In this document: one piece after another, positions 17,905 to 49,870 of the stretch
Layout: each line of letters starts with the position of its first letter
Position numbering within the stretch: the stretch's first letter is position 1
Assembly (NCBI GenBank): GCA_047495785.1
Contig: JBLDXI010000020.1
Span: 930,001-994,000 of the forward strand
DNA: 64,000 nt
Reading direction: 5' to 3'
DNA from: Lepidodermella squamata
Taxonomy: Eukaryota > Animalia > Gastrotricha
Position numbers and translations under genes: made by a program
The notes under the pieces: generated by a model
Databases searched by the model: none
What the model saw: the letters and a program-made list of their open reading frames with translations, nothing else
Told to the model about the DNA's origin: nothing

Positions 17905-20900
17905 ATGAAGGTTTATCAGCTTTTCGTGCAACCTGAAGAGGATGTATCCCAGCCGATAAACGATGTAGATTTGAAAAACTACCTGCTAACGTTTTTTCGC
18001 GAGACTACTCTCGCTGGACCACCGATGATGGTGAAGCAGCCTGGGTTTTTGAAAAAGCTGCTCTGGTTCATAGCCATAGCAGCTTGTGGTGTCGGACTTT
18101 ATTGGCAACTCGATGTGCGATTGTAACTGTATTTCTCCATGAGTTTATGGATTTTTGTGATTTCAGATATTCCTGGACAATTTCTTGTCCTTTTCACCGA
18201 GTACCACGGTCACGATATCGACAGCTCGCCAACTACCCTTCCCAGCAGGTAATATCTCTAAAGCAGGAGCTATGTCATTGATAATCTCAACCGCTTACTC
18301 AGTCACCATTTGCAATAATAATCCCGTGACAACCGATTGGTATTACGAGGTCAATCCTACAACAGCGCCTCCTGCGGGTCCCAGTGGGAGCCCGTCATCA
18401 AGCGGTTCTGGACAATCCGGTGGGCAATCATCGGGTGGATCCGGCTCTTCATCGGGAACTTCAGGAGGAACTGCGCCTTCATCGGGTACCTCGGGGGGAA
18501 CGGCTCCTTCTTCCGGTGGCTCGGCTCCATCATCGGGAACATCAAGTGGGTCGTCTCCTTCTTCTGGTGGAACAGCCCCATCATCGAGTGGAACTGCTCC
18601 CTCAGGCGGCGGAAGTGCTCCCTCAGGCAGCGGCACAGCTCCATCGGGAGGTACGGCTCCAAGTGGTTCGGGAGGCGGTTCGGCACCAGCCGCTCCACCC
18701 GGCCGGCGTAGGCGCTCAGTTGAATTCGCTGGCGATCGTCTGCAAGACAGCGGTTATCATCGTGTTAAGCGACAACAGCCGCCAAGTTCGCAATCGCCGC
18801 CAACAGCTTCCCAAGGACCACCTACTTCTGGCTCTGGGTCCCCTCCCCCTCCGCAATCGGGCCCAGCTCCGCCTCAAAAGCAAGATTTTTCAGCGTCTGT
18901 TCAAGAGCGATTGGCGATGATGTCGCAGGCATGTCAGACCAAATACAGCAATCGATCATACACTGGTATAAGATAACGATCCGAAAACAAAATGAAATAT
19001 ATTAGCTTTTCCCTATTAGGTCATCAACTATGGTAAAATTGACCTTTCATGCGTGACGGTGCATAAATGACACACTCTTTTAGTGATATGATTTTGTCTT
19101 GCGAATACTACGGAGTTTCTTGTCATATTGGAACGTGGGTGATTTCCTAAAATAATCACATCCTTTTAAATGAGTTATCCTTTCAGCAACTTTTCCATAT
19201 GGCACTGGAACCCGTCATTTGGTGATTTTGAATGTTAAAAAGCTTCATTCTTTGACTAATATCTATCCAGGGAACTGCTACACCTTTAACTCCGGCTACT
19301 CTACATCAACCAGCCCAGTTAAAGGCACCACACAGGATCTATGGTCATTGAAATACGGCGGAGATTCCGGTGGCGGCATTCGCATTTCCACCATGCCTGG
19401 GGACACTTACGGGTTGTATGTAGTTCTCAACTCGGATGTTGGCCACTACATGCCAACTTCGACAACTGTTGGATGGCGAGTTATCATTCACAACCAGACC
19501 GAAATGCCATTCCCGGAAGAAAGTGGTATCTTCGTGGCGCCTGGAACATCGACCAGAGTGGGCTTATCACTGAAATACACTGAGCGACTAGGCTCAGTGG
19601 ACAAGTAAGCTTTTCCAATAATTATTTCAGAAATGAAGAGGTTTCTTTTCTAGCAAATTATATGTAGCAAAGTACAGCGATTGCGTGTCAGACGGGAACT
19701 TCTATTACGACGATGAGAAAAACGCCTACTCGAAATTCATGGAAGTATCATACACTTCAAGCGCCTGTTTGAAAACCTGTTATCAAAAACAGGTCATGAA
19801 AACTTGCGGGGTAACTTTTCAAATTGATACCTCCATTTCTAACTTTGGAACTTGCAGTGCTTCGATTTCTACATCCCGAATGAAGGCAATGCTTTCAAAA
19901 GCATCGACGGCTACGCAGCCATGCCTCCTTGGTCTGTTTACTGCTTTGTTACTGGCTTGTTCCACCTTAAACTTATTTGTTCCTCTTTTTACAGCATATA
20001 CGAAAATACCACGTTGTGTAAGCTCGAACATTTCAGCAGGTGTCTGTTTTAACTGTCGGTTTTCCTAGGGACTTGTCGCGATGGGGTATATACGGCTTAC
20101 ACCAATGGTAGCATGGTTTGCGACTGCCCCGACAATTGCAAGTATGATTTGGCGAGGGACATCGTTTCACCCTTAAAACTTTGCGTTAGGTCGTATTCTT
20201 TTGATATGACCCTGTCGACGCTCGCCTGGCCGAACACAGTGCAGGATCCTTTAATGACTAGCTGCTACACGTTGTACTCAGTTCTTCAAAAGCGTATCAA
20301 CTACAACGACTCGCAGTGTACCAACATGTCGTACATTGCGGCTGATGTCTCAGATGGGACGCCTTACAATTTATTGGATCAACTGAAGAAATGCGCATCG
20401 GGCGAATCTTTCCCGCCAATCGGAAGTTTGACAACTACTGATGTGGTAAAATTAATGATACACCAGTATGTTCACGTTGTTAAAATTATTCGAATAGGCA
20501 ACAACGTATATCTCCAACCAATTCGCCGAACTTTACGTTTTCTATCGCGACTTTAACTATCAGGTTAGGACATCACGTAATGTGTCTTTTCATCATTTTC
20601 CCTCTACTTTCAGACAATCATCGAAACGGAGTCAGTCACCATCGCTGATGTATTCGCTAATTTGGGTTCGATAGTTTATTCTTATGCCATTAGCAATCAA
20701 TTTTTTATATTAAGGTGGCATCGTTGGCTTATTTTTTGGATTTACCATTCTCACCTGCTTCGAGTATGTTCAGCTGGCAGTCGATCTCATTTTGATCGGA
20801 TGTGCCAGGCTTTGCTGCAAGAACCCGGAGAAGTCTGCAAAAGTCGCCCCCGATGGACAGCCAGTGCATGGTGCTCCAAATTATCAACCTGTCTACAAAC

Positions 20901-20998
20901 CGGAGCATGCTAACTGGAACGGGTCTGGCTATCACAGCCAGCTCTACCCTGTCGGGTATCCAACGCAAGCGCCAGCCTATCCCTCATATCCTGCTTGA
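17905..20998 (+). CDS. DEG/ENaC channel subunit 1 (about 14 introns)
   Basis: TM1, FPAVTICNNNP, GNCYTFN, GWRVIIHNQTEMPFPEESG, thumb YTSSACLKTCYQ, CDCPDNC, TM2 FANLGGIVGLFFGFTILTCFE. All exons join in frame through short GT-AG introns. Confidence 0.93.
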
Positions 20999-21438: not shown

Positions 21439-24400
21439 ATGGTAAAAGTTAAGATATATCAGATCTTCGTGACCGAACAGGAAGATGAGGCCCAGCCATT
21501 GGCTGATGCCAAAGTGCTGCCCTACCTTACGACTTTCTTCCGAGAGACCACGATGATGGGGCTGCCTAACTTGGTTAAACAGCCCGGAATACTCAAAAAG
21601 CTGTTCTGGCTCATTGCAATTGGAATATGCGCGTTTTTGCTATGGTGGCAGACCGATGTAAGTGATTTGTGACTATTCTGAAATTCTGTCAATCTAATGC
21701 TTTCAGAGCTACATGTCGAACGTCCTGTTATTCCAAGCCGCGACCAGTGTTTCCTACAAGGCAGTTACGAAGTTGGACTTTCCAGCAAGTAAGATCTCGA
21801 TGTCATTCGTTTTTTGCGACTATACTACTTTGATGATGTGCTTAGTAACGATTTGTAACAACAATCCAATCACCACCGATTGGTACTACACAGTGAATCC
21901 AACCTCAGCTCCTGCCACAGCAACTGCAGCTCCTTCTCCACCTTCCGGAAGTGGACCAGCCTCGTCATCGGGACCTGGTCCTGCTGCTCCGACTGCTGGC
22001 GCGGGAACGACGGTTGCAGGTGCAACCACTGCGGCAAGTGGCCCACTTCCCCCCGCACCCGCACCCTCAGGTCGCAGGCGCCGAGAAGCAGAGCAAATCT
22101 TCAATCGATTCAAGAGACAGGCTGTGTCGACTGTTCCCCCGGCTTCCGGTCCAGGCACTGCTACAGGCTCTGCTACAGGCGGAACGCAACAGAGTACACC
22201 CGCGGCTCCGACGCAGAACTCACCGAACTCACCTCCTACCAAGAAAGTTGAGTACGCTGATGAATACGCTGAAAAAATCAAAGTCCGAACGCAAGTATGT
22301 TCAAACTCAACCTACGCTAACCGAGGCTCAACCGGCCATCAACTTTGGTAAGCTATCCCCTCTGTTGTAACCTCCTTCCTATAAGAAACGTTTGAAGTGA
22401 TATGGTGCTATTGTGCGAATACGCTGGAGAATCCTGTAATATCGGAACGTAAGTACACCAAAACATCGGATGGCTTGCTTAAACACTAAAATATCGTAGC
22501 AACTTCACATGGCACTGGAACCCAACTTATGGTAGGAAAATTTTAAGATTTCAAAGTCCTTACTCCTAGCGTGCTTCTCTGAAAGGAAATTGCTACACAT
22601 TCAACGCCGGTTACTCGGTCTCTTCGAGCCCTGTTTATGGCAATGAGACTGACCTGTACACTCTCAAAAAGGGAGGATCCAATGGAGGGGGCATTCGAAG
22701 TACTTCAATTCCAGGCGACAGCAATGGTATGGATCCTTTTTCTTCTGAAGCTCGAAGCTGAAATTCCTAAATTTGATTTCAGGGCTATATGTACTGCTCC
22801 ACGCAGATATCATTCACTATTTGTCAACGACTTATGAAGTCGGTTGGCGCGTTGTGATTCACAACCAAACAGAAATGCCCTTCCCTGAAGAAAATGGCAT
22901 TTCGATAACACCAGGTCAGAGTTCTTAGCCATGATATTCGAAATGAAGTATCCTCCTTTTTCAATTCCAAGGCACATCCACCAGAGTAGGCATTTCGTTT
23001 GGTTATGGCTCGAGATTGAACGTTGTTGACAAGTTGGTGGAGAATTAATGATCGTCAATTTCATTTATAACTGTCTACTTTTCAGTATTCTCTACATGGC
23101 GAACTACAGCAGCTGCGTCACAGACACGGACTATGAATATGATGCCTCGGATAATGCCTACACTCGAATGATGGAAGTTGGTTACACGCCGAGTGCTTGC
23201 AAGAAAACCTGTTATCAGCGCCAAGTAAAAGATATCACACTTGTTTCGGAATATTTCGCTTACAAATGGATGTCTTTTTAGGTAATGTCGGTATGTAAAG
23301 TAAGTTGATATTGCACTTACTTTTCGATCTTGCAATGCGATATCGTGTTTCAAGTGTTACGACGTTTATTTTCCTAACGAGGGCAACGCGTTTTCTTCGG
23401 TTCCTAATTACGCAAATATGGGACCTTGGTAAGGTTTTCCCCATCGATACAAACAATTTCTCACCAAATTTGTTTAGTTCATATACCAACGATACTCAAT
23501 GTAAGAAGCAATGTGTTGAAGTTAAAGCTACAATAGGTTTGTTGAACCTGTAACAGGGATCTGCCGAGAAAATGCAATTTACAACTACACAAATGGTAAA
23601 CTCAACTGTTGGTGTCCGGACAATTGCGAGTAAGGACAATTTAGTTGAAAATCTGTGCTTTTGAAATTACACTTGATAAAGTTTTTACAACTACGATCTC
23701 ACAATTTCGGCATTTCGCTGGCCAAACAGCGAGAATGTATCGATGGTAAGATTTAATGATTTCACGGCCCATCGAAGCTATTTCTCGCCTGTGATATAGG
23801 CTACGGTTTGTTCAAATCTGTATTCGATCTTGACGAAACGCATAAACAGCAACGATTCGACGTGTACGAATACGTCATACCTGGCCCAGAAATACTACAA
23901 CAAAACCAGCCAGTATCAGCTTTATCAGCAGTTGTACGGCTGCTTGGATGGAAAATTTTCATATCCCATCGTTTCCTATGACGAAGTGGGCGTTCATGTT
24001 GTAGGCAAACAGTTTGCACAATTGTACATCTACTATCGCGACTTTAATGTCCAGGTAAAAATGCAGCAATCTCGGATTTTCGGAGTTATTACTGTATCAT
24101 TACTATAATTTAGGTTGTGCAAGAATACGAGTCGTATGCGATGTCAGATATTTTTTCAAACCTTGGTAATAAGGATTAAGGTTGCTCTTAGCGAATATCC
24201 CTTCCGATTTCTATTTCATCAGGTGGTCTAGTGGGGCTGTTTTTCGGATTCTCGATTCTGACACTGTTTGAGTACGTACAGCTGCCCATCGATCTGATCC
24301 TCATTGGTATAGCTAAACTCATCAATCGCAACAAACCGAAAAAAGGATCAGCGCTGACCTTGAGTAGCGAAAGCTCGATGGCGAAGATGGTGCCTCAGTC

Positions 24401-24638
24401 GGTTAGAAATGGTCGCATGCACAGTGTGTTGTCACATGAGCACCATCACTCAAATGCCGCGGTATACCCACAGCAAGGACCAGCCATGCAAGGCAACTTT
24501 CCACCTTATGGCACCCCACCGGCTTATCCAGCTGATTGGAACGCCTATTACGGCCAGTTCTACCCCCAGCCGCAGAAGGATCAGACCCTACCGGGGGCTC
24601 TTTACCCGAACCCTACAGGCGATAACACTCAAATGTGA
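21439..24638 (+). CDS. DEG/ENaC channel subunit 2 (about 16 introns)
   Basis: Same motif series. TM2 FSNLGGLVGLFFGFSILTLFE, C-tail with PPAY. Confidence 0.93.
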
Positions 24639-24856
24639 AAATGAAGTTTTTCTTCCCACGATGCAAGGGACAATTTAATTGGATTATCGATAATTCAAAA
24701 CTAATCAAATTGTTTTTCTCGTTAAGTGGAAACATCTATTGCTGTGACTGAGATGAATTATTAAAACAATCGATGTTAGAGAAATAACACATGGAGAGCA
24801 GCATTCATGATGATTCAACATGCGGAGTCTGCTATTGATCCCAGAGTTGTCGTGAT

Positions 24857-26507: not shown

Positions 26508-29177
26508 TCACTTCGGGGGTAATGGAGGAAAGTTATTGTGGGCACTGACGCTTGATTTAGAGGTCAGGCTCTCATGGGCTTGAATCGGTGGCGTCGGTCG
26601 AGGGTGAGGCGAATTCGGTGGGCCATAGATTTCCTCAGGAAACTTTTTCCCGTTGGGGTCATGGAAAACAACTTTGACCCTAAAAAAAGTACACAATTAT
26701 ATTTGAAGATACACAGCATTAAAAGATAACTAACTCTTCTTTAGGAGTAGTTTTGTTTCGATTCGATAAATTTAACAGTTTGGCAATCGCGATTCCGGTC
26801 AAATCAATTAGAAGCATGACGTATTCCATTAGTGTCATGAAGGAAAAGCCGAAAAACAACCCCAAAATACCGCCGAGATAAGCGAGCAAATCGGCCAGTT
26901 CCAGCCATTCGCTTTCAATCACGGTCTGGTAGTTGAAATCTTTGTAGTAAATGTAGACCTCAGCAAACTGGTTGCCTATGATGTAGTCGGCAAGCTCGTA
27001 GTAAGAACTGATGGGCGCGGTGAATGTTTCTTTAGTGCATCCGTCAAGGTCATCGAGAAGGTGGTAAGGAATACCGCTACTAACCATCTTTGCAATGTTT
27101 GAGGTTTTTGTGCAAGTGCTATCATTCTTGGCGATTCTTTTGTCAAATACTTGTTTGATCGTTCGGCATAAGGGGGACTATCATATCGGATGAAACTTTT
27201 TCATTTATTCTATAAATTCTATAAATTTGCTTACGAGAGATTGGGAAGATGGGTTAGGCCAGCGCATCGAGCTGATTGTAGGAGTTATGGCATAATTTCT
27301 GCAGTTTTCGGTGCAATTTGCTGCACAGCCAAGCGTATCGGCCTGATACGCTTTCAAAACGCCCTCCCGGCACTTCCATTGGGTCGTGTTTTGGTACGAG
27401 CATGGAGGAACTGTAGTGGAACCGGTAGCGCTAAATGCATAACCATCTTTCGGAAACAGAAAGTCAAAACACTACAAAATGTTCATGTTAGAAAATATTC
27501 TCAAATTTTCAGTAGAAAATACCGAACAGGTGCTGATAACATTCAGCTGGTAGCAAGTCTTGTAGCACGCTGATGATGAGTAGGTCGTTTCCATGACTTT
27601 AGAATACGCATTTCGTGTATCATTTTCGTTTCGCGCGGTCTCATCTGTGCAATCACTGTAAGTGGCGGTGTATAGTTCATTCGTAACAGTGGAAAGGCGT
27701 TGAATGAAGCTCAGTTGTAGTCCAATGTGAGTAGAAGTGCCAGTTGTGACGAAAATGCCAGTCTCCTCGGGGAAAGGCATGTCAGTCTGGTTGTGAATGA
27801 CAATCCTCCATCCAATCTTTTATCAAGATCAACATATACAGACCAAAAATCGTATGCTACTCTAATACCTGCGTTGTCGTTGGGATGTAATGATCGGTAT
27901 CTGCGTTTAGCAACAAGTAAAGACCGTATTGATCTCCTGGTAACTTGGTGATTCGAATTCCAGTGTCATTGGCACCACCGCGTTTCAAAATAAATAAATC
28001 AGTCTCTAAGCCGTAAACCGGACTCTCCTTCTCGAAATAACCGCCGTTAAATGTGTAACAGTTTCCTGATTTATGTAGCGTTCAAAATTCGAGCAAAACT
28101 ACTTTATCCTAAACATACCGTACTGAGAATTCCAGTGCCAATGTCTAAAGGAGCTAGACGATAGAATATAAAAATTTCATACTCTCAATCGATGCGGTGG
28201 CCAATGGCTTACGCTTCGGGGCTGCAGGAAACGCCACTGAACTGGCAATCTAAAACCATGCTACAAACATAGTGAATGAATGTCCTAATGGTGCACATAT
28301 TTGATTGGGGAACTTACTCGCAAAGTTGGTGTCCTATTGCTTCACGTTCCTGAACAGGCACTTTTGAAGCCTTCTCTTGGATAGCCAGTTTTATCTGAGT
28401 GTCGTCAGAGAAAGCTGGGTATTCTCCAGGAGGAGGAGCGACTGCATTCTGGGGTTTAGGTCCCTGTATCACCTGTCGCTTTTTTCTGGAAAGAATTTCC
28501 CGTTTTTTCCGACCAGACGGAGGTGCCGGCGGTGTAGTTCCAGCTCCGCCAGTGCCAGCAGTGCCAGTAGCAGCACCGCCAGACGAAGCGGCAGGTGATG
28601 GCGCCGCAGTTACAGGATTGGTTCCAACTGAGCCCGCAATACTAGCCGCATTAGCTACTGTTGCACCACTGTTATCTGTAGGCACAGCTGCTCCACCACT
28701 TCCCCCTCCACCTTTAGCAGCTTGAAATCCACTTGGGTTGTACCAATCATATGAAACAGGGTTGTTGTTACAAACTGCAATCAGAATTTACCATCGAAAG
28801 TTGTAGATGAATATTTCTTACTTGTAATTGCTGGAAAATACAGCCGACGTGATGTTTCGATCGTTACGGATGTCGTTGCCTGGAATCGTGTAAATTTCAC
28901 GATAAAGATCTGGAAAAAAATGTTAAGATATCATATTTAAGAGATCTTTCAATCGAATTACGCTCAGCTCCCAGTAGAGAAGGAAAGACATTAAACCAAT
29001 GCACGCTAACCAGAAGAGTTTTTTCAGGATTCCCGGTTGCTTGACCAAAAAAGGGAATCCAGCCATGGTGGTCTCTTTGAAGAAAGTGACCAGGTATCGG
29101 ATGACGTGAACATCTCGGAAACTTTGCGCGCCGCCTTCGTTCTCCTCTTCAACGTATAAATCATATATTCTGACCAT
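26508..29177 (-). CDS. DEG/ENaC channel subunit 3 (about 9 introns)
   Basis: ETTMAGFP, FPAITICNNNP, GRKKREILSRKKRQ, GNCYTFN, TM2 LAYLGGILGLFFGFSFMTLME. Confidence 0.93.
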
Positions 29178-33818: not shown

Positions 33819-34189
33819 ACTTTGTTCGAATAAAAAATCAAAACAAGAATATATCAGGACATTTCTTCTACCAGACGTTTTCTCAGTAATATATTATCCA
33901 TCACTGAGTGCAGAGACGAATGATTTAACAACTGCGACATCGATGATATCATGAGACGAAATGAATACTGAATGATTCCTATATAACGTTATATCATTTG
34001 TTCCGCGTGGGCACAGGTTCTTAAGAAAACAAATATAAACATTTTCTTCATTAAAAGACGTTGCCCAGCAATCGATCACGCCTGGGAAAGTAACGATACG
34101 GCAATATATAAAACATCTTGTAGTTTATTTTTTATAAAAATTGATTCATTTCGTCATGGTTTAAAACCTTGTCACAAGAAGTCTCAGTT

Positions 34190-37100: not shown

Positions 37101-37799
37101 GCTGGGCCTGAAGCAGGGCTGGATGCAGGACTGGATGCAGGACTAGATGCTGGGCCTGAAGCAGGGCCTGATGCAGGAACCGGAGAGCCAGAAGGGGATG
37201 CCCCGCCCGCTGGGGGTGCCGGTGCCGGGCTTGGACTGGGCGGCTTATTTGCAGCTTTGAACCCATCTGGATCATACCAATCATATGATACTGGGTTGTT
37301 GTTGCATACTGAATCAAAACAAAATTAATTTTCAGATATTCTCAATCCATCAAATCTTCAAAATTACGTGTTATTGCTGGGAAATAGAGTCGACGGGATG
37401 TTTGAACGGTAACGCTCGTTGTCGTTTGCCACGCGAGGAAATTTGTGAAGAAGAGCTGTAATGAAAATAATGCTTGTGTTCGATACAGTGAACTAAATAA
37501 AAAGCAAAGTCATAACAACAAAACTTACGTTCAACTGCCAATAGAGCAGCCAAGCCATGACACCGATGCTTGCTAGCCAGTACATTTTCTTAATGATTCC
37601 TGGCTGTTTCATGAGATGAGGGAAGCCTATAAAACCAGCGCAGTTAATGTCTCGAACGAGGATTGAAAGTTAACAGAAACGAACCAGCGAGAGTTGTCTC
37701 AGAAAAGAAGCTTCGCAAGAAACCCAGCACTTCAACATTGCGTACAGTGGCTCCCTCTGCTTCAGGTTCTGATACAAACAATCTGTACACTTGAACCAT
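34190..37799 (-). CDS. DEG/ENaC channel subunit 5 (about 14 introns) with long Pro/Ala/Ser repeat
   Basis: ETTLAGFP, FPAITLCNNNP, GRRKR...RRIKRQ, GNCFTFN, TM2 LSYLGGIFGLFFGFTFMTMME, tail PPSY. Confidence 0.92.
36755..37180 (-). repeat. Coding 12-nt minisatellite (PASG/PASS, then PSSP/PASP tetrapeptides) in subunit 5
   Basis: Tandem gatgcagggcct/gatgcaggacta and gacggagggctc-type units, read in frame on the minus strand between the WY motif and the furin site. Confidence 0.9.
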
Positions 37800-38191: not shown

Positions 38192-40710
38192 TTAAAATTT
38201 GAACTGTTGAGGAGCCAGCGGTGATTTGCTGTTTTCCTTAACGTGTGGATGGACAATGTTCTCAGAAGCTTTACGGCGTGGCGCTTTCTCGTCTTTGCTA
38301 ACAGAAACATGGATGGTACCTTCGTCAGTATCCCTACTTTAGTTTGCAAGTAACATTCATTGTGAAATCAAAGAATGACTCATACCTTAAATTATCGTCA
38401 GATGACGAGGTTGCTACTGATGAACCACGCTTGTTTTGTTCAGATTCTGAATGCCGCATTTTGACCGACATACAGCATTTGGCAATTGCAATTACAATCA
38501 GATCGATCACGAACAGCACGTACTCGCAGAGAGTTAACATGGTGAATCCGAAAAACAAGCCTGTGGGAAGCAAAATTAGATAGAAAGGGCAACAGATTTA
38601 GACGTTCCATGCGCCTACCAACAATGCCACCGAGATAAGCGATAAGATCGCCGATTTCAATCAATTCAGTCTCTATGATGGCTTGATGCTTAAAATCTAT
38701 ATCGATAGATTAATTAGTTCCATACAAAAAGAGAGAACTATTCCTACCGTTGTAGTACACAAAGACTTCGGCGAATTGATTGCTAATCATGTAAGCGATA
38801 TCGTCCTGGTTGTTCGACGCGATGGAGACTGAGCACTGTTTCAAGTCGTTAAACATCTGAAAACCAGGGGAGTGTCATATATTGCTAAGCACGAATGAAG
38901 GCTAGATACCTTGCTTGTGGATCCTTTCTTGTACTCTTGGGCGATTATCGATGCGGAGCAGTTAGTGCCATTTTGCGAGGCAATTGCTTTCAGTTTATCA
39001 TAGAGCTCACCGCAAACTTTGATCTGTTAGAGGACAAGTAAGTGGGAAACATTTCTGACGTGGATTCTTACCAGTGTTAGGCCTTCATCCGCAGGCCATT
39101 TAAGCATCGATACAGTTGTGTCGTATGAAAAGCTCCTACAACATAGAACAGGAAAAGTATAGCGAGATGCAACAAAGAAACTTCTCAGCCATACGTGCAC
39201 GTATCAGGACAACTGCAGGGCAGCTTGTTATCGATATAATCTTGCCAGATGCCCATTTTACACGTCCCTGTAGAAAATGGGACAATTAAATCATCTGTTT
39301 TAGGTGATTGTGCCACGTACACAGCGTTTCATTTTTGAAACTGCATAAAGGTAGGCTCCGATAGCCTGGGACGGATTTGAAGGCGCTGCCATTGTTCGGG
39401 AAGGAGTAATCGTAACATCCACAGCTTTTCATTACCGTCAGGCTGTAACACGTTTTGAGACACGCTTCTGGTGTATAGGCAACCTCTAGAAAGTTCGAAA
39501 ACGCGTTTATCGGATCGTCACTTTGCAGGCCATCGGAATCAACGCATTCGCTATAATTGGCCGTGTACAAACCATTGCTAACCAGCCCGAGCTTTTTCAT
39601 ATAACTCATTTTGATGCCAACGTTGGTCGAAGTCCCAGGCATTATGAAGATACCCTGTTCGTCAGGAAACGGCATCGCTGTTTGATTGTGAACGACTAGA
39701 CGCCAGCCAACTTGCGATGTGGTGTACAGCGAGTGATCCAAGTCGGCATGAAGAAGTAACCTCAATCCATACGAATTTCCAGTTTGTGTCGCCTTACGAA
39801 CGCCTGGTTTCGCAGCATTACTTCCGCCGGTTTTCATTTCCCAAGCTGATACATTCTCGTCCCTTAGTGGGCTATCTGCCTTCTTGTAGCCAGCGTTGAA
39901 CGTCCAGCAGCTTCCGTATTTCGGCGACCAAAACCATGTCGAAAATTCTCTGAAAAAACTATCTTTTGAGGACCGCCTTTGGCTAATAATTCTGACTTAC
40001 GAAGCCACGTCACAATCCTGTCCATTGTAGGTGCACTGCAAGACTATGTCGCAGAGTGAATGACCGGCGATTGATCTATTGCGATAAGGAACGACGGCGG
40101 CCAACTCCATGATTGAATACATGTTTGAGAACGACGAGTCGAAATTAGGCATTGTAATGATCTTGTTGTTGTTGTTATTATTGTTATTGTTATTGCTGTT
40201 CCCACCGCCCTTGTTTTTTGGGGTTGTAGTGACAGACTTGGCAGCCTGTCGTCTCTTTCGCCTGAACTGATCATCTGGAGGTGGCGGCATCGCTGAATTA
40301 TTTGCACTTGAGAACCAACCTCTTGTAACAGCATTGTTATTGCATAGTCTAAAAAGTTGACAGAATCTAAGAATATAGACATAAGGGCCTAGATCAAACT
40401 CTTACGTTATCGCTGGGAAGTCCAGCTGTCGAACAGATTCGATAGTCACAGCGGTCGTGGCCTGCCATCGAAGAAGTTTCGAGAAGAAGAGGTCCAGTTC
40501 CCAGATCAAACCCGCCAAAGAAAGTCCGATGCAAACAATCCAGAACAGCTTCCTCAGGATTCCCGCATGTTTTATGAGAGTTGGAAATCCCTGAAGCGTT
40601 GTCTCTCGAAAGAAGCTGCGAGCGTATTCCTTGAAATTCACATCTGTTATCCTGACAGGAATGTCATCTCTTTCAAGGTATTGCAAGCGGAACCAGTCTA
40701 GCTTGCGCAT
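38192..40710 (-). CDS. DEG/ENaC channel subunit 6 (about 9 introns)
   Basis: ETTLQGFP, FPAITLCNNN, RRKRRQ, poly-Asn, GSCWTFN, TM2 IAYLGGIVGLFFGFTMLTLCE. Confidence 0.92.
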
Positions 40711-41366: not shown

Positions 41367-43847
41367 TCAGCGATACATCTGGCTCTGCACCATAGACGGA
41401 TAAGGCTTGAACTCAAGGTTAGTCACGGGTCGCCCAAACGCAGTCGATCGATGATGAACCATTCCACTATCCGGTAAGGGCGGCTGGTTGTTGTAAGGTG
41501 GCTGCATTTGTTCTTGCCACATTGCTGCTCGCGACCTCGTCATAGGACCTTGCATTTCAAGAATCGGCTGCTTTGCCAAGCTGTTAGCACTAGACTTCCG
41601 TTTCTTGGAACATCGCCCAATTCCAATCAGAATGAAATCAATCAACAGTTGTACGTACTCGAAAAGAGTCATAAATGTGAACCCGAAAAATAGACCGACA
41701 GTGCCTCCGAAATAAGCAATCAAGTCGTGCAGGGCCATGTTTTCGTTTTCAACAATTGTTTGATAGTTGAACTCCTTGAAGAATACATATACCTCAGCGT
41801 ACTGCCCGCCGACACCAATCGCAGCCCATTGAGGTTCGGTGGTAAGCTCCCATTTAGTTGAATCCTGGTAAGGAGCTCCGGCTCGGCAAACTCCCATTTT
41901 CTTTGCAGCCGAGGGTATTCCGTCAGTTTCCTCAGCTGCTGACACCGTTAAATAGGTGTAGCCATCGCATTTCGAATCAGAACCGTTACCCCGAGCAGCC
42001 AGTATTTCGTAGATTTCGTCGCAAACCATCATAAGAGAATCTCCAGATGACACTGGCCATTTAAGACGAGAAACAGCTGTTTTGTAAGAATAGTCAGTAC
42101 ACGTATCAGGACAAGAGCACGGCAGCGTTCCTGCTTTAAAATCAGCAATGACGCCCTCTTTACATACCCACGATGACCCAGTCGTCACATTGTAATAACA
42201 AGGATCAAGATCAGCGTAGTCTTCGAATGCTTTGCCCATGTTTGGGTAGTAAAAGTCATAGCAACCACACGTATCCATCACGTATTTTTGATAACATGTC
42301 TTGATGCAAGCAGATTTGGTATACGAAACTTCCATGATACTAGTATAAGCATTTTTGGGGTCGTCCGGGATATATGTCGATGCGTCTATGCAGTCGCTGT
42401 ATGGAGCATCGTACAGGACAGTCGAGACTACGCCAAGTCGCTTGATGTAGCTCATCGAAACGCCAATGCGGGTAGAGGTTCCAGGCATTATTTCGATTCC
42501 GTTCTCCTCGGGGAAGGGCATCTCCGTCTGGTTGTGTACAATCAATCGCCAGCCAACAGTCTTGGTCGTATTCATGTAATGATCAATATCTGCAGCATAT
42601 ACTTAGATTCCCTCTCTCAATGATTGAGGATGAAACTTACCAGAGTTTAAGAGAAGATAAAGGCCGTACTGATCGCCAGGAATACCGGAGTAGCGAACAC
42701 CTGATCTATCCGCTCCGACCTTTATATCCCAGGTTTTGTCACTTTTCGAAGTTGTATCAGCTTTGGCGTAGCCTGAATTAAACGTGTAGCAGTTGCCATA
42801 ATGTGGGTTCCAGTGCCATGTGCTTAGGTTCCTGAGAATTCAGTAAGTCTACAACATAATTTCAATGGTGATGCTGAACACATACGTTGGTATGATGAGA
42901 TCGGAACCTTGCCACCTAGCTGTTAATACCATATCGCACAATTGGTGGCCGGCAAGTGAACGGTTTTGATACGGGACGGTGCATGCCTTTGCTTGAATTG
43001 CCATCATACTCTCCAAAGAAGAAGATAGGCTTTTTGCGACTGAGCTTTTTACAGAGTCCGCGAAAGCCGCACCACCACCACCACCGGCGGGTCCTTGCTG
43101 TGGGCCTGGTTGCTGCTGCTGGCTCGGCATCATTCCTGGCCCCACCGACGGCCCAGCTTGACGCTGAAAGGAGAAGTTTTGAGACCATTCAACTCAGATC
43201 ATTTGGCTGAAACACATACCTTACGCCTCCCTGGGTTGGGTGCAGGTGGCTGTCCTCCCATGCCTCCGGTAGAACCTATACCAGTCGCACCTCCCCCACC
43301 ACCTGAAGCACCCGAGACTCCATTTACTACCGCCTGGGCAGCGGGCTGCCCCGACTGAACACCGTTTCCCGCCGACTGAACTGCGGGCCCCACTGGACCA
43401 GCAGCACCTCCAGCCGGTCCTGGAGGTGGTGGTTGAAACATAGATGCGCTTGAACCTCCATCTTCATACCAGTCAGTAGTAACCTGTGATACAATCAATA
43501 TTGGAAATCAAGCACTAATTATCATTATCTACCGGATTATTATTGCAGATCGTCACTGCTGGGAAAGGAAGCTGTCGAGCAGTTTCAATCGAAATGGCTG
43601 TATTTGCTTGCCAGCTTAGAAATTTCGTTAGAAAAGCTTGCATCTGCCATTCCAGACCAAGGGTGCATAAAATTATAGCTGATATCCAGAAGCATTTTTT
43701 GAAAATTCCTGGTTGCTTTACTAGCGGAGCAACACCCTGAAGAGACGTTTCATAGAAGAACGTTTTCAACCAATGCTTCACGTGGACATCGTTATAGTGC
43801 TGCGGCTCGAATTCTTCGTCTGGCACGTAATATCTCCAAAATAACAT
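41367..43847 (-). CDS. DEG/ENaC channel subunit 7 (about 4 introns)
   Basis: ETSLQGVA, FPAVTICNNNP, GRRK|RQ across an intron, a 1.2-kb final exon, TM2 IAYFGGTVGLFFGFTFMTLFE. Confidence 0.93.
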
Positions 43848-44175
43848 GACTTTTTCTCAAAATTATCTGATGGTAAACTAAGTTTCGAACTACTATTAAA
43901 TTCGTTATTTTTCCAGGATTTACATTGATCGTCATTATTGATTGCTCCAAATGGATGTAAATTTTTTATGTCTAAGTGCTCGCTATTGGCACACAGGGAA
44001 TGTTGGGGGCGCGATTGAAACACACTGTTGTTTAGCAACACAAATGTTTTCAAAAATGTTTTTATTTGAAAAAAACTGCAAGATAAACGAGGTTAAAGAC
44101 ATTGATTTTCACCCAAACGAAACGGATTAAACAGTGAAGTCGGTTTCTGTGTGGTTTAGAGTGCGATGAACTGCG

Positions 44176-47157
44176 TTAATACCGATGGGAATACGGGTAG
44201 AGATTCGACGGCCCTGCTGCGTGAAATGTGTTGGCGGCCTGTTCAGCCAGAGTTTGCGTGATTGACCTTGAAAATTTTACATAAATTCCAGAAATTTCAA
44301 ATAAAATGATTCAGCATTACCTTCGACGAGGCTGATATTGAGCTTTCATGTTGTTGTAAGTGGAGTCTTCGGATTCCAGAGGTTTTTTCTCCGACGTGAA
44401 GCGGCCAACGAAAACTACAATTAAATCGATCAGGAGTTGAATGTATTCGAATAGAGTCATGAACGAAAAGCCGAAGAACAGGCCAAGGATGCCTCCGAAA
44501 TACGCAATAACATCAGTCAGCGCAACGTTTTGACTTTCGATGATAGTCTGATAGTTGAAGTCTTTATAGAAAATGTAAACCTCGCCGAACTGGCTGCCGA
44601 TTGCGAACTGGGAATAATCGGACGCTTTGTAGTAGAGCGGTGGATAGGGCGCAATTAAAACACAAGCCTCGCATTTTCTAACCAACGGTGCCATACCACT
44701 CGAAGCTTTCAACCGTTGCGTTACTAAATAGGATGTACTGTTACACGTCGTATCATTGCTCTTGGATCTTTTATCCAAAATATCGTAGAGCTCGGAACAG
44801 ATGAGTTGCAATGTTTTCTTATTCGACATCGGCCACTTCAGGTTGGCTATAGTTGTATCGAAAGAGTATGCTTTGCAGGTATCCGGGCAATCGCATTTAA
44901 CATCGGTGTCGCGAAAGATTTTCGCGTAAGTAGCCTTGCAGTTCCATAGTGTATTGTTAGTTTTATCGTAGGCACAAGGTGGAACGTCTTTATAGTCCTT
45001 AAAGGCTGTCCCGATGTTCGGATAATAGATGTCGTAGCACGAGCAGTATTTCATTATGTACTGCTGATAGCAGGTCTTCAAACACGCTGGTTTCGAGTAG
45101 GAAACTTCCAGCAAATTTGTGTAAGCGTTCTTTTCGTCGTCAATGTTCAGCTCGGTCGCATCGACGCAGTCGCTGTAAGGCGCGTTGTAAAGAACATTAT
45201 CGACGACGCCCAAACGTTCGATGTAGCTCATGGAGATGCCGATTCTGGACGAGGTGCCAGGAGCTATGAAGACGCCACTCTCTTCGGGAAACGGCATTTC
45301 AGTTTGATTGTGAATTACAACTCTCCAGCCTATTTGAGTCGTCGTATTGGTATAGTGATCCTTATCTAAAATAAATCGTATTAATTTGACATAGTTAAAG
45401 GGAAGCTCAATATACCTGAGTTAAGGAGTAGATAGAGGCCATACATATCGCCCGATTGTGCTGAAGTTTTGATGCCGTCGCCATTCGGGCCACCTTTTTT
45501 GATAGTCCATGTATCCTTGTAGTTCGAAGCAGGGCTTTCAGCTTTGGTGTATCCGGCGTTGAATGTGTAACAGTTTCCTAATAAAGAGAGTTTGAACGGT
45601 GCTTATTCTCACTTATTTCGGGAATTTACCATAGAATGGATTCCAATGCCAGGTCTTGAATGCTCTGATAGAAACAAAGCAATATTTTCATAAATGAGAA
45701 GGCGTTGAACTCACGTTCCAGGATCGATAGTTGCGCCCTGCCAAGTTGCCGAAAGAATCATATCACACAGCTAAGAAATCATACGAAATTTGAAACTGGG
45801 AGAATCACAAGTGAGTTTTCTAACCTGGTGTCCAGCCAGCGATCTATTTTGGTATGGGAGACTGCAGGCCGCTGTCTGAATGAGGACGCGGCTTTCGAAA
45901 GAAGCTGCCAAGTTCTGTTTGACGGCGGACGCATCGGTTCTAGTTCCTGGTGGGCCGGGCTGTGCTCCAGGTGGTGGTGGTCCTGGCAAAGCGCCAACAG
46001 GGCCGGTTGGAACTTGTCGCTAAGATACTATTTTGATGATCCGTGCTAAGATTTTACAGATCGCCTTACCTTCTTTCGACCTGACGGCGGCGGTGGAGGC
46101 ATCCCAGCCGGTCCCGCCGCGGCTGCTTTGGTAGTTGCACCTGGGCCGACCGGGTTAGTCGCTCCCCCACCAGCTGCAGGAGTGCCCGCTGGTGGTGCAG
46201 GAGTCGCTCCTCCTGATGCAGGTTGCGTTCCGCCAGTACCAGCAGGGGGGCCGGATGCCCCTTGCATTTGGCCACCGGGAGTTGTAGCACCTGCAGAAGG
46301 AGGGTTGCCTCCACTTGGGCCTGGAGCCATTGCTCCTGTGACAGCTCCGGATGCGGCTTGACTTTGACCACTCGCGGGACCACTGGTTGCCCCTGGACCA
46401 CTAGGTACCCCAGGGCCACTGGGTACACCAGGACCACTAGGAACACCAGGACCACTGGGCACACCAGGACTACTAGGTACCCCAGGACTACTAACACCAG
46501 GACCGCTAGGTACACCAGGACCACTAGGTACACCAGGACTACTCGGTACGCCAGGACCACTAGGTACCCCAGGACTACTAACACCAGGACCGCTAGGTAC
46601 ACTAGGACCACTAGGTACACCAGGACTACTCGGTACGCCAGGACCACTAGGTGCACCAGGACCACTGGGTACACCGGGACCACTAGGTGCACCAGGACCA
46701 CTTGCTGCGCCAGGACCAGATTGCTGGTTTGATGTCGAGAAAATGTCATAGTCAGCTGCGCCCCCATACCAATCTGTCGTAACCTGGGAAAAGGCCAAAT
46801 AATGAGTGATTGAAAACTTTAAACTCTTTGAAGACCGACTGGATTATTATTGCAGATTGTTATAGCCGGGAAAGGCAACTGCCGGGCAGTTTCCAACGAA
46901 ATTGCCGTGTTTGCTTGCCAAGTAAGGAAAGAGCCGAGGAACGCAGCCACCTCCCAGTAAAGGCCAAGAGCACACACGATTATTCCTGCAACCCAAAACA
47001 GTTTTTTGAAAAGACCAGGTTGTTTTGCAAGCATCGGCACTCCGGCCAAGGTTGACTCTCGAAAGAATGTATCGAGCCATCCGCCCACGTTTACCTCACG
47101 ATACTCCTGGAACTCAGGCTCCTCAGCCTTAACGAAATAACCCCACAGCATCGGCAT
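44176..47157 (-). CDS. DEG/ENaC channel subunit 8 (about 7 introns) with SGPGVP repeat
   Basis: ESTLAGVP, FPAITICNNNP, GRKK|RQ across an intron, TM2 IAYFGGILGLFFGFSFMTLFE. Confidence 0.93.
46375..46720 (-). repeat. Coding 18-nt minisatellite (SGPGVP/SSPGVP) with an 87-nt higher-order duplication
   Basis: Tandem ccaggaccactaggtaca-type units. 46473-46559 is repeated at 46560-46646 with about one mismatch. Confidence 0.9.
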
Positions 47158-47376
47158 GTTCACCACTATAAGATGAAAGAACTGCTTTCATCAAATTTCC
47201 GAAACCCAATGAAAAAATCACAGTTTTAATTATTAATATCTTTGAGTGCTTCTGATCACAACGCGACAATTATCGATCTGTTAATGGCGTATGGCCTATC
47301 AATATTTTACATGTCCAACTTCAATTCAAAAATTTACAGTTCACGCAAGTAATCGATGAGAAATAAGTTAAGGATG

Positions 47377-49870
47377 TCAAAACTTTGTTGGTATGCCGCC
47401 AGAATATGCAGGTGGTAGTGGCTGCTTACTAGGGCTGTTAGGGGCGAGCTGAAAGCCGTAGTTGAAGTTCGGAGGCGGAGCATTCAGCAGAGCACTGCCT
47501 CTGTTTGGTGGTACCAGCATTCCACCACGTTGGCTCATAGATCCGGGGCGAATCATGCTTCAAAAGGAAAGAAAATGTAGTGAAATGATTAAAAAGGATA
47601 GACTGATTACTTTTGAAGGTGCATTGAACGTCGCCTTGTCACGGGGCCCTTGTACCCATCGTTAACCTCAGCTGAAGTTATGTTGGATCGACAAGCCAGA
47701 CGGCCGATGACGATAACGATGAGATCAATCAGTAGTTGGACGTACTCGAACAATGTCATAAAGCTGAATCCGAAGAACAGGCCGACAATGCCACCGAAAT
47801 ATGCGACAAGATCAGTGAACGACATGTTCTCATTATCAATAACTGTCTGATAGTTGAAGTCCTTGAAAAAGATGTAGACCTCGGCAAAGTTGTTGCCAAC
47901 GCCGTAAGCAGCCATCTCTTCTTCATTGCCGTATTTCGCCTTCATTTCCGGTGCATATGGGGTGCCACTTACGCACTCATAGTAGGCTGCAGCTGACTTG
48001 GCTACTCCATCCTTGGTTTTTGCTTGGTCAACCAACGTGCTCGTCGTCATGCATGTTGGATCGCTCTGGTTGGTCCGTGCTTTCATTGTTTCGTAGATGC
48101 CATTGCAGACAAGTTGCAAGTTCGCTGTCGTCGCAACTGGCCATTGCAGCGTCGAGATAGAAGTCTCGTATTTGTGCGCCTTGCAAGTGTTCGGGCATTT
48201 GCAGGACAAAGCTCCCGTTTGGTACGAAACAGCAACCGTGTTTTTGCAGTTCCAATCAGTCATGTTAGCAGAGTTGTACATGCAGGGCGCTAGCTTGCCG
48301 CCGTAGTCGCCAAACGCCTTGCCGGTGCTAGGATAGTAAAAGTCGTAGCAGCTACAAACCCGCATTACTTCCTGAAGCATAATTTTGATTAAAACTCGAA
48401 AATTTCCGATAAGACAACCTTTTGGTAGCAAGTTTTCAAACAAGCCGATTCGGTGTAAGCGACCTCCATCATATTGGTATAAGCATTTCGCTCGTCGTCG
48501 GGTATGAAGTTTGGCTCGTCAACACAGTCCGAATATTGGGCTGAGAAGATGTAGTTGTCGAGAACACCCAGCTTTTCGATGTAGCTCATTGAAATGCCGA
48601 CACGGGTCGACGTGCCTGGAGACACGAAGAAGCCACTCTCTTCCGGGAACGGCATTTCAGTCTGGTTATGCACGACAATGCGCCATCCGACTTGCTTGGT
48701 CGTATTCATGTAATTGTCAATATCTGGTACGAAAAAGCTTCATCCTGTTCAAAATTTTATAGCTGAAAGCTGATACCTGCGTGCAAGAGTAGGTAAAGCC
48801 CGTATTGGTCCCCAGTCTGCCACGAAATTCGGACCCCGTTGCCATCATCGCCTGTTTTGATCTTCCAAGTATCCGTACTCTCTGTTTTCTGATCTGACAG
48901 CTTGTAACCGCCGTTGAACGTGTAACAGTTACCTTTTATTAAGGAAGATTAATTTGCTGAATGATACAGTATTATCAACAAACCGTAGTATGAGTTCCAA
49001 TGCCACATAGTAAAATTAGTGTCTGGATTCAGGCTTTCCCCTTGCCAAGTCATCGACATTACCATATCACATAGCTATCGATAAAAGTCGTTGAAATCGA
49101 ATTCATCTTCAATATCTAGCTAACCTGGTGCCCGGCAGATGTTCGATTTTCATAGGGCAGAGTGCAGGCCTTTGCTTGCAGCGTCATCGCCTGCTCCAAA
49201 GAAGCCGCTACATTGGCAATCGGCTTGCTTGCTGAGTTTGCTGTATTGGAGACCACATTCGTAGTAGGCGGAGTTGACACCGCCCCTAAAATGTTAGTTG
49301 GTCCCGGCGGAACTTGTCGCTTTAACAGGGGATAAAATCGTATAGCGAACATTTTTTTAAGATAGATCTAATAACTTTTTTTCGGCCTGGTGGTGCCGGT
49401 CCAGGTGCTGCAGGCGCTGGACCTGGGGCACCAACTATCCCCATTACCGGCGTAGTCCCAGCAGCTGGATCTGATATGGCATTAAGTTCGTCTAATGAAG
49501 TGACCTTAACGCAAATTCCTAATTATTGAAACTTCAAAACTCAGCATTTCCTTACTGGATTGTTATTACACAAAGTAATAGCAGGAAACGGCAGAAGTCG
49601 AGCGGTTTTCATTGAGACAGCTGTGTTAGCCTCCCACGACAGAAAGGTTCCGAGGAAAGTTAGAATTTCCCACATCAGTCCAAGGGTGCAAAACATAATT
49701 GCGATAATCCAGAAGAGCTTCTTCAAAACGCCTGGTTGCTTTATCAGCATAGGAACGCCCTGCAGCGTCGTCTCGAGGAAAAACGTCTTCAGCCATGTCC
49801 CGATTTTCAGGGTTTGCAACGGCTGCGGCTCAAAGTCTTCCTCGTCCACGTAAAATCGCCAGATATGCAT
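47377..49870 (-). CDS. DEG/ENaC channel subunit 9 (about 7 introns)
   Basis: MHIWRFYVDEE start, ETTLQGVP, FPAITLCNNNP, GRKK|RQ across an intron, TM2 VAYFGGIVGLFFGFSFMTLFE, tail LPPAY. Confidence 0.93.

What the first reader, a model, noticed from the sequence alone, without database searches (positions are those of the whole stretch)
17905..49870. Ten-copy DEG/ENaC array defining an atypical channel family with hypervariable, furin-opened extracellular tails
Seen: nine intact genes and one pseudogene in 32 kb (two on +, eight on -). In each, the finger region carries a low-complexity Pro/Ser/Gly/Ala/Thr insert between NNN(P)V..WY and a furin-type R-x-K/R-R site. Its length runs from ~15 aa (gene 6) to ~230 aa (gene 8), built from a different repeat in each paralog. 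The last basic site is always followed by Gln and a second low-complexity, mostly Pro-rich arm. Known: vertebrate ENaC is activated by furin cleavage in the finger/GRIP region, and N-terminal Gln cyclises to pyroglutamate. Inference: cleavage leaves each subunit with two free, disordered, probably O-glycosylated arms of paralog-specific length on a conserved pore, giving a tunable tether repertoire for flow, touch or chemical sensing, possibly as heterotrimers.
Basis: partly seen in the sequence, partly recalled or inferred. Interest (0 to 1): 0.9.

Follow-up and report, generated by a model that had tools for sequence, protein, structure and literature searches.

The report
Sodium-channel gene cluster with cleavable floppy loops
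Nine working copies and one wreck of an ENaC-like sodium-channel gene sit side by side, each with a fast-changing floppy outer loop around a strictly kept protease-cutting motif, a feature that many unstudied invertebrate relatives turn out to share.

Summary
The window carries nine intact DEG/ENaC genes and one gutted pseudogene (two on +, eight on -). In every intact copy, low-complexity sequence of 16 to 229 residues follows CNNNP-V..WY. It ends in R-x-K/R-R, and the last basic site is always followed by Gln and a second low-complexity arm.

The inserts are coding:
- all 90 modelled introns are 47-73 nt and AT-rich, whereas the inserts are up to 705 nt at 57-64% GC (47% in the short g7 insert);
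- RNA contigs join exon 1 to the insert exon of gene 8;
- repeat units in gene 6 differ almost only at third codon positions.

The genes and some metagenome fragments form a well-separated family. Among solved structures it is closest to ENaC subunits. The disordered loop sits between the first two finger helices, where ENaC has its GRIP domain.

The features do not define this family alone. Of the 82 nearest outside relatives (echinoderms, hemichordates, Intoshia and others), 36 carry such a site in the same segment, against about 3 expected.

Cleavage, glycosylation and any tether role remain untested. I rate this a new variant of a known kind, of moderate interest.

The parts
17905..20998 (+). 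g1, intact DEG/ENaC gene, 790 aa, 15 exons
   Evidence: spliced model; all junctions GT..AG
18326..18868 (+). g1 finger loop: arm 1 (126 aa, Ser/Gly-rich), two sites (RRRR, then RVKR 15 residues on), then Gln and a Pro-rich arm 2
   Evidence: tandem repeats of 30 and 51 nt
21439..24638 (+). g2, intact gene, ~772-820 aa; 3' end uncertain (24638 as a continuous ORF, or 24678 in the spliced model)
21869..22237 (+). g2 finger loop: arm 1 of 68 aa, two sites (RRRR, then RFKR 7 residues on), Gln, arm 2
26659..29177 (-). g3, intact gene, ~660-679 aa; last small exon uncertain
28431..28757 (-). g3 finger loop: arm 1 of 82 aa (Gly/Ala-rich), two RKKR sites 4 residues apart, Gln, arm 2
29537..32413 (-). 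g4, intact gene, 782 aa, 11 exons
31479..31931 (-). g4 finger loop: arm 1 of 102 aa (Ala/Thr/Ser), two sites (RKKR, then REKR 10 residues on), Gln, arm 2
32768..33818 (-). g5, pseudogene: remnant of a g6-like copy that lacks TM1, finger, beta-ball and most of the palm
   Evidence: tblastn with the g6 model
34154..37799 (-). g6, intact gene, ~930 aa, 16 exons; tail end uncertain; PPSY in tail
36521..37291 (-). g6 finger loop: arm 1 of 184 aa ((SPAS)n then (SPPS)n), two sites (RRKR, then RIKR 18 residues on), Gln, arm 2 of 47 aa
   Evidence: third-codon-position divergence among units
38334..40710 (-). g7, intact gene, ~640-692 aa; a further upstream exon (to 40905) is doubtful
40162..40329 (-). 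g7 finger loop: shortest arm 1 (22 aa), one site RRKRR, Gln, Asn-rich arm 2
41367..43847 (-). g8, intact gene, 756 aa, 5 exons, transcribed
   Evidence: RNA contigs and joints
43220..43483 (-). g8 insert exon (88 codons, phase 0-0): VTTDWY, Gly/Ala/Pro arm, ends GRRK; the next exon starts RQ
   Evidence: RNA joint 43481->43531 (+2) links it to exon 1
44317..47151 (-). g9, intact gene, 840 aa, 7 exons
   Evidence: RNA joint 45576->45629
46070..46783 (-). g9 insert exon (238 codons, phase 0-0), (PGVPSG)n, ends GRKK; the next exon starts RQ
   Evidence: no RNA contig over 45700-46499
47607..49870 (-). g10, intact gene, 651 aa, 7 exons
49376..49504 (-). g10 insert exon (43 codons, phase 0-0), no WY motif, ends GRKK; the next exon starts RQ

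Best explanation
This is a lineage-specific, tandemly expanded family of ENaC-type (clade B) DEG/ENaC cation-channel subunits.

Its finger domain is reduced to a short first helix (VTTDWY...), a long disordered loop and one or two further helices. The loop is translated, evolves fast by repeat slippage, and keeps a Pro/Ser/Thr/Gly/Ala make-up. It probably carries O-linked sugars.

In the middle of the loop sit one or two strictly conserved proprotein-convertase (furin-type) sites. Most likely a convertase in the secretory pathway cuts each subunit there. The channel then reaches the surface as two chains held together by the palm beta-sheet.

In the five two-site paralogs a peptide of 8-22 residues would be released, as in ENaC alpha and gamma.

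Shown here: gene structure, coding status of the loop, conservation of the motifs, position in the fold, and transcription of g8.

Inferred: cleavage, glycosylation, and any effect on gating.
For: Family and fold. Pfam ASC hits. The best solved relatives are ENaC beta, alpha, delta and gamma (3e-22 to 4e-14), with no ASIC chain reaching 1e-8 (for the homologue P0001). The AlphaFold model of P0001 (48% identical to g8) has pLDDT 82 and matches FaNaC, ASIC and ENaC structures.

Loop position. Residues ~147-219 lie between helices 134-146 and 220-232; most are modelled with pLDDT under 50 (151-156 and 163-206). ENaC's GRIP domain lies between alpha1 and alpha2 (PMC6197857).

The loop is coding:
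- 90 introns are 47-73 nt with GC 0.34, against loop arms of 66-705 nt, GC 0.57-0.64 in eight genes and 0.47 in g7.
- In 6 of 6 genes where the loop and its flanks share one exon, the frame is kept.
- In g8 an RNA joint links exon 1 to the insert exon, and the exon is covered by RNA contigs.
- The homologue P0001 is intronless and keeps the loop.
- DNA-defined repeat units in g6 differ at codon positions 1/2/3 by 58/16/319 and 49/0/174.

Site conservation against loop divergence. The core is 53-74% identical and arm 1 only 8-30%. Yet R.[KR]R is present in 9 of 9 genes, Gly precedes the first basic run in 8 of 9, and Gln follows the last site in 9 of 9. Gln also follows in the metagenome members P0001, P0002, P0005 and P0047.

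Selection for such sites in relatives. 36 of 82 have one, against 3.0 +/- 1.7 in shuffles. Density is 3.66 against 0.12 per 1000 residues in the rest of the ectodomain. The residue after the site is mostly Ala, Ser, Gln, Asp or Gly, as in furin substrates.
Against: - No protein data: cleavage is inferred from motif conservation only.
- Human delta-ENaC has a polybasic tract in the same region that is not cut (PMC8791634), so a motif alone is not proof.
- The loop has none of GRIP's beta-strands or its disulfide, so an ENaC-like 'inhibitory wedge' has no visible docking element.
- The inter-site peptides are short and not conserved.
- RNA support covers g8 only. The RRK|RQ junction itself was not among the joints listed, and g9's insert had no RNA contig.
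- The structural model is of a metagenome homologue, not of a window protein.
Confidence: 0.55

Rival explanations
1. The loops are uncut mucin-like spacers. The basic cluster has another role, for example binding sulfated matrix sugars or acidic partners, and the subunit stays a single chain.
For: A polybasic tract at the same place in human delta-ENaC is not cleaved (PMC8791634). No cleavage data exist here. Outside the family the residue after the site varies.
Against: The motif is the strict convertase consensus R-x-K/R-R in 9 of 9 genes, and it lies in a disordered, exposed loop. Tandem sites occur in five paralogs. Conservation of Gly before and Gln after the site is hard to explain unless new chain ends are made. 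A mere charge patch would not need the exact spacing.
Confidence: 0.2
2. After cleavage the two arms act as paralog-specific, glycosylated tethers or gating springs. Their length tunes the response to flow, touch or chemicals, possibly in mixed trimers.
For: Arm length spans 16-229 residues on a conserved core. Arm sequence is under purifying selection in g6. The g9 arm is an elastin-like (PGVPSG)n. Orthologue pairs keep the arm type (g7 and P0002 are both Asn-rich). Tether models and sugar tethers are discussed for MEC-4 and ENaC (PMC10148893).
Against: There is no functional, expression-pattern or binding-partner evidence. Once cut, the arms are free ends and have no identifiable anchoring motif. 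Comparable loops occur in many relatives with unknown roles. Length variation is what repeat slippage produces in any tolerant loop.
Confidence: 0.12
3. The inserts are not part of the mature protein: they are spliced out as introns or exitrons, or the insert exon of g8-g10 is usually skipped.
For: In g8-g10 the insert is a symmetric phase 0-0 exon, so skipping would keep the frame. No RNA contig covers g9's insert. GC-rich repeats are open in several frames.
Against: The g8 RNA joint goes from exon 1 into the insert exon. Intron size and GC are sharply different from the inserts. Wobble-position divergence is seen in g6. An intronless homologue keeps the loop.
Confidence: 0.05

Closest known systems
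Vertebrate ENaC alpha and gamma subunits with the GRIP domain (furin-activated epithelial Na+ channel)
   Same: - Same superfamily, and the best match among solved structures.
- Polybasic R-x-K/R-R sites lie between the first two finger helices.
- Five paralogs have tandem sites that would free a short peptide.
- PPxY motifs occur in two C-terminal tails (g2, g6).
   Different: - No folded GRIP beta-sheet or disulfide; the region is a low-complexity, disordered loop of very variable length.
- The inter-site peptides are 4-18 residues and not conserved.
- Gln always follows the last site.
- The N-terminal HG motif reads A/M/Q-G.
- The family forms a separate, long-stemmed clade.
'ENaC subunit-like' predicted proteins of echinoderms and hemichordates (Patiria, Diadema, Antedon, Saccoglossus, Ptychodera, Glandiceps), plus Intoshia, Plakobranchus and one Nematostella protein
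   Same: They are the nearest named relatives (26-34% identity). Many have a Pro/Ser/Thr/Gly-rich insert ending in a (G)-RKRR-type site in the same segment, some followed by Gln.
   Different: They are uncharacterised predictions. They lack the VTTDWY start and the GFS/T pore motif of this family. Their second arm is often acidic and aromatic rather than Pro-rich. They are separated from the family by a branch with 100% support.
FaNaC/WaNaC peptide-gated channels and ASICs
   Same: Same fold. FaNaC also belongs to clade B (PMC9822975).
   Different: Weaker sequence match. They have a folded finger domain, and I found no report of convertase sites in them.

Membership tests
DEG/ENaC superfamily (Pfam ASC, PF00858) | Significant match to the ASC profile | tested here: met
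   E-values of 5e-45 to 4.5e-17 on exons of g7-g10, above the gathering score; all nine genes align along their whole length to P0001
DEG/ENaC superfamily (Pfam ASC, PF00858) | Two transmembrane helices around a Cys-rich ectodomain with the hand-like fold | tested here: met
   Model of the homologue P0001 has pLDDT 82; Foldseek E-values of 3e-26 to 2e-21 against FaNaC, ASIC and ENaC; 16-21 Cys in each window ectodomain core
DEG/ENaC superfamily (Pfam ASC, PF00858) | Post-TM1 FPA(V/I)T-x-CN motif and a TM2 G-x-S filter region | tested here: met
   FPA[IV]T[IL]CNNN and GLFFGF[ST] in 9 of 9 genes; the middle residue is Phe, which is unusual
DEG/ENaC superfamily (Pfam ASC, PF00858) | N-terminal His-Gly gating motif | tested here: not met
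   ETT[LM][AQM]G in all nine: Gly is kept, His is replaced. Relatives mostly have HG (consensus)
DEG/ENaC superfamily (Pfam ASC, PF00858) | Amiloride-sensitive cation current from trimers | not testable with these tools
   needs electrophysiology
ENaC-type clade B | Groups with ENaC rather than ASIC in a phylogeny with characterised anchors | tested here: inconclusive
   phmmer ranks ENaC subunits first and the named neighbours are 'ENaC-like'. My tree held no characterised anchor sequences
ENaC GRIP domain | Insert between finger helices alpha1 and alpha2 | tested here: met
   Loop between H134-146 and H220-232 of the model, compared with PMC6197857
ENaC GRIP domain | Folded core of antiparallel beta-strands stapled by a disulfide | tested here: not met
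   The segment has pLDDT below 50 and no strands. No Cys in the arms except one in g4
ENaC GRIP domain | Two polybasic sites flanking an excisable tract | tested here: met
   Met in g1, g2, g3, g4 and g6; there is a single site in g7-g10
ENaC GRIP domain | The released tract inhibits the channel | not testable with these tools
   needs expression and recording
Mucin-like (Pro/Thr/Ser) domain | Long Pro/Ser/Thr-rich repeats carrying dense O-glycans | tested here: inconclusive
   Ser+Thr+Pro make up 47-72% of arm 1 in g1, g2, g4 and g6, while g3, g8 and g9 are Gly/Ala/Pro-rich. Glycosylation cannot be tested here

The most novel reading that the evidence does not exclude
Convertase cutting of a disordered finger loop may be an old and widespread trait of ENaC-type channels across echinoderms, hemichordates and spiralians, and perhaps cnidarians. 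On this reading ENaC's proteolytic activation is a specialised descendant of that trait rather than a tetrapod-era invention. In this family the cut ends would be capped like neuropeptides: a Gly before the basic run could yield an amidated C-terminus, and a Gln after it a pyroglutamate N-terminus. In g8-g10 a symmetric cassette exon could switch the cleavable loop on or off.
Probability: 0.3. Interest if true: 0.75.

Novelty: new variant of a known kind. Interest (0 to 1): 0.55.

Why it matters
Proteolytic activation is treated as a hallmark unique to ENaC. Its GRIP domain is called unique (PMC6197857), and its tandem sites are tied to the move of vertebrates onto land (PMC8791634).

Here an invertebrate family keeps furin-type sites, partly in tandem, at the same place in the fold but inside a disordered loop. 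The same kind of site is about 30 times denser in that segment than in the rest of the ectodomain among its nearest relatives.

If these sites are cut, convertase processing would be a general maturation step of ENaC-type channels, and it could be tested directly in oocytes.

The array also offers a natural series of loop lengths (16 to 229 residues) on one conserved core. That series could show whether such loops affect gating, trafficking or anchoring.

Tried and rejected
- **First gene modeller.** It rewarded each gene with its own hits, so it kept open introns and broke the RRK|RQ junction. I replaced it with a protein-to-genome alignment against the intronless homologue P0001. A 28-nt minimum intron still misplaced one g8 junction; raising it to 38 nt reproduced all three RNA joints. 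The C-terminal tails of g2, g3 and g6 and the 5' end of g7 remain uncertain.
- **Word-indexed protein search.** It found only three hits, so the source genome's own proteins are not in that collection. I could not name the organism and did not spend a search on it.
- **Structure prediction.** I used a smaller 82-row alignment instead.
- **Repeat-unit test.** Defining units by a peptide pattern was circular. I redid it with DNA-defined units.
- **Literature.** One search on low-complexity finger inserts returned nothing relevant. Searches for convertase sites in non-vertebrate DEG/ENaC channels found none. This covers only the held library.


Full report
**What is there**

The window comes from an animal genome with very small introns. 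Four landmark motifs of DEG/ENaC channels recur nine times in register between 17.9 and 49.9 kb: the post-TM1 CNNNP, GNCYTFN, (I/V)HNQ and the TM2 LFFGF(S/T). One extra TM2 lies at about 33.25 kb. Exons of these genes match Pfam ASC (PF00858) with E-values from 5e-45 to 4.5e-17.

I built spliced models by aligning an intronless full-length homologue (P0001; 693 aa; from a metagenome contig) to each locus with my own protein-to-genome alignment script. This gave nine complete ORFs of 651-930 aa:
- g1 17905-20998 (+)
- g2 21439-24638/24678 (+)
- g3 26659-29177 (-)
- g4 29537-32413 (-)
- g6 34154-37799 (-)
- g7 38334-40710 (-)
- g8 41367-43847 (-)
- g9 44317-47151 (-)
- g10 47607-49870 (-)

All junctions are GT..AG. 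The tenth copy, g5 (32768-33818, -), is a gutted relative of g6. It keeps an N-terminal scrap, about 105 residues of the thumb/palm, TM2 and the tail. It lacks TM1, the finger and most of the ectodomain.

**The loop**

In every intact gene the segment from CNNNP to the conserved GHQLCD motif has four parts:
1. A short conserved start, V-x-x-(D/E/G)-W-(Y/F). It is absent in g10.
2. A low-complexity arm of 16 to 229 residues.
3. One or two R-x-K/R-R sites.
4. Gln, then a second low-complexity arm of 15-47 residues, followed by a conserved helix.

The two-site genes are g1, g2, g3, g4 and g6, with 4-18 residues between the sites. The one-site genes are g7-g10. Gly directly precedes the first basic run in 8 of 9 genes, and Gln follows the last site in 9 of 9.

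Each arm is built from its own tandem repeat. Examples are (SPAS)n then (SPPS)n in g6, (PGVPSG)n in g9 and (SGTSGGTAPS)-like units in g1. Between paralogs the core is 53-74% identical, while arm 1 is only 8-30% identical, which is about what shared composition alone gives.

**Are the inserts coding?**

Five lines of evidence say yes.

1. *Intron statistics.* The 90 modelled introns are 47-73 nt (median 53) with GC 0.34. The first arms are 66-705 nt, with GC 0.57-0.64 in eight genes and 0.47 in the short g7 arm.
2. *Reading frame.* In g1, g2, g3, g4, g6 and g7 the loop lies in one exon with conserved sequence on both sides. The frame is kept in 6 of 6.
3. *RNA.* Run X1 is RNA. It carries a SMART-type adapter at a loose end, shows CT..AC joints that remove exactly my predicted introns, and has no depth over the 43.9-44.3 kb spacer that the DNA run X2 covers. 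In X1 one joint links g8 exon 1 to the insert exon (43481->43531, cut +2, which equals my 43483|43533 junction), and the insert exon is covered. The g8 junction 42886|42831 and the g9 junction 45577|45630 are confirmed as well.
4. *Intronless homologue.* P0001 keeps a Gly/Pro-rich loop ending in MRKRRQ.
5. *Wobble divergence.* I cut g6's two 12-nt arrays purely by DNA period. The units differ at codon positions 1/2/3 by 58/16/319 and 49/0/174. The copies have drifted at wobble positions while the peptide was kept. That means the loop is translated in this frame and under purifying selection.

Limits: the RRK|RQ joint itself was not among the joints listed, and g9's insert had no RNA contig. 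g9 has low depth overall and its insert is a hard repeat.

**Where the loop sits**

P0001 is 48% identical to g8 over the aligned part. Folded with an 82-row alignment that included window exons, it gives a confident model (pLDDT 82, pTM 0.77). The model matches FaNaC, ASIC and ENaC structures.

Residues 134-146 (the TDWY... start) form a helix. Between it and the next helices (220-232 and 237-243) lies the loop, mostly modelled with pLDDT under 50 (residues 151-156 and 163-206). ENaC's GRIP domain is defined as the stretch between alpha1 and alpha2 of the finger (PMC6197857).

So the loop and its sites occupy the GRIP position. However, they have none of GRIP's beta-strands or its disulfide.

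**Which family**

- By phmmer, the last exon of g8 hits ENaC beta (3e-22), alpha, delta and gamma. FaNaC reaches 7e-10 and no ASIC chain reaches 1e-8. P0001 gives the same order.
- An exhaustive HMMER search of 1.84 billion cluster representatives found 3365 relatives. Only about a dozen are 39% identical or more, and every one whose source I looked up comes from ENA metagenome assemblies, with the three contigs I fetched all from one sample series. The rest are 36% identical or less.
- In a maximum-likelihood tree, the nine window proteins and seven of these fragments form one clade (SH-aLRT 100, stem length 0.68), apart from 55 other relatives.
- Metagenome sequences interleave with the window paralogs, so the subfamilies are older than the split between the two organisms.
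- The two-site genes plus P0006 and P0047 form one subclade (support 91). P0047 has the same tandem arrangement, with sites RRRR and RVKR and then Gln.
- g7 and its neighbour P0002 share a short first arm and an Asn-rich second arm.

The tree has no characterised anchor sequences. Placement in clade B (PMC9822975) therefore rests on similarity ranks and on the names of neighbours.

**Not unique to this family**

The nearest named relatives are predicted 'ENaC subunit-like' proteins of Saccoglossus, Ptychodera, Glandiceps, Patiria, Diadema and Antedon. Intoshia, Plakobranchus, Owenia and one Nematostella protein also appear.

Many of them have a Pro/Ser/Thr/Gly-rich insert ending in a polybasic site in the same segment. 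Examples are ...PPPPQG-RKRR-A...GKGAG-RRKR-Q and ...TQT-RKRR-Q followed by (TEPAPDGG)n.

Among 82 such proteins outside the family:
- 36 carry R.[KR]R in the finger segment, against 3.0 +/- 1.7 (maximum 9) in 1000 composition-preserving shuffles.
- The motif density is 3.66 per 1000 residues there, against 0.12 in the rest of the ectodomain.
- The residue after the site is mostly Ala, Ser, Gln, Asp or Gly.

The Patiria protein is clearly ENaC-like (1e-48 to gamma-ENaC). The Nematostella protein is ambiguous between ASIC and ENaC.

The phylogeny papers I checked do not mention furin at all, and a broad review does not either. The ENaC literature calls GRIP unique to ENaC and ties tandem sites to terrestrial vertebrates.

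**Mechanism**

Most likely (0.55), a proprotein convertase cuts the exposed loop in the secretory pathway. Each subunit then becomes two chains. In the two-site subclade a short peptide is also released.

The strict conservation of the site in an otherwise hypervariable loop supports real cleavage. So does the flanking Gly and Gln, which make sense mainly if new chain ends are created. Gly before basic residues is the classic amidation signal, and Gln after them the classic pyroglutamate signal. That link is my inference from established knowledge of peptide processing and is not shown here.

Against an ENaC-like inhibitory wedge: the inter-site peptides are short and not conserved, and no folded docking element exists.

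But length variation is also what slippage produces in any tolerant loop. I give the tether model 0.12.

**Related notes from the scan**

I confirm the intron positions and add two points. The insert exon is symmetric (phase 0-0), so skipping it would remove arm 1 and the site in frame. On the tree the single-site state looks ancestral.
- Another note (s1-421464) reports furin-type motifs in a sugar-rich loop of this genome's TRPN channels. I did not test it. It hints that such loops may be a habit of this organism's surface channels.

**Verdict**

- Novelty: a new variant of a known kind.
- The cluster itself is an ordinary tandem expansion.
- The interest lies in the conserved convertase sites at the GRIP position and in their wide, undescribed spread among ENaC-like channels.

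Noticed in passing
window 24973-25677 (-): A 235-aa Cys-rich ORF sits between g2 and g3. It has no Pfam match and may be a secreted protein unrelated to the channels.
   Followed up: partly
window 15544-17304 (-): An apparently intronless 586-aa FAAH-type amidase gene (PF01425, E 6.7e-80) lies just upstream of the array.
   Followed up: partly
window 50936-51418 (+): An exon encoding a C4 zinc-finger (nuclear receptor) DNA-binding domain lies just beyond g10.
   Followed up: no
window 17905-49870, all nine genes: Introns are remarkably uniform: 90 introns of 47-73 nt, median 53, GC 0.34. There are micro-exons of 13-22 nt, for example 19020-19032, 36355-36370, 23282-23299 and 30585-30606.
   Followed up: yes
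window 41367-49870 (g8-g10): These three genes have a single 0.8-1.2 kb terminal exon where g1 and g2 have 7-10 exons. Yet they carry two private phase-0 introns that bracket the insert exon, which makes it a symmetric cassette. Skipping it would delete arm 1 and the cleavage site in frame.
   Followed up: partly
window ~34400 (g6 tail) and ~24560 (g2 tail): PPxY motifs (PPSY, PPAY) occur in two C-terminal tails. They resemble the Nedd4-binding PY motif of ENaC subunits. The g2 case depends on reading the tail as one ORF to 24638.
   Followed up: no
N-terminal exons of all nine genes (e.g. 17992, 43760): The family-wide His-Gly gating motif reads Ala/Met/Gln-Gly in all nine, and the TM2 G-x-S triplet has Phe in the middle (GFS/GFT).
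   Followed up: partly
L001 5449-7530; L002 6947-9253; L003 2063-3160: The only close relatives come from one metagenome sample series and are intronless or nearly so, unlike the intron-rich window genes. Several paralogs exist in that unknown organism as well.
   Followed up: partly
window 41300-47299: The DNA run X2 shows clusters of half-depth alternative bases (for example 41576-41676, 41912-41975 and 44884-44950). These are consistent with heterozygous haplotypes. None of them, and no indel, falls in the g8 or g9 inserts.
   Followed up: no
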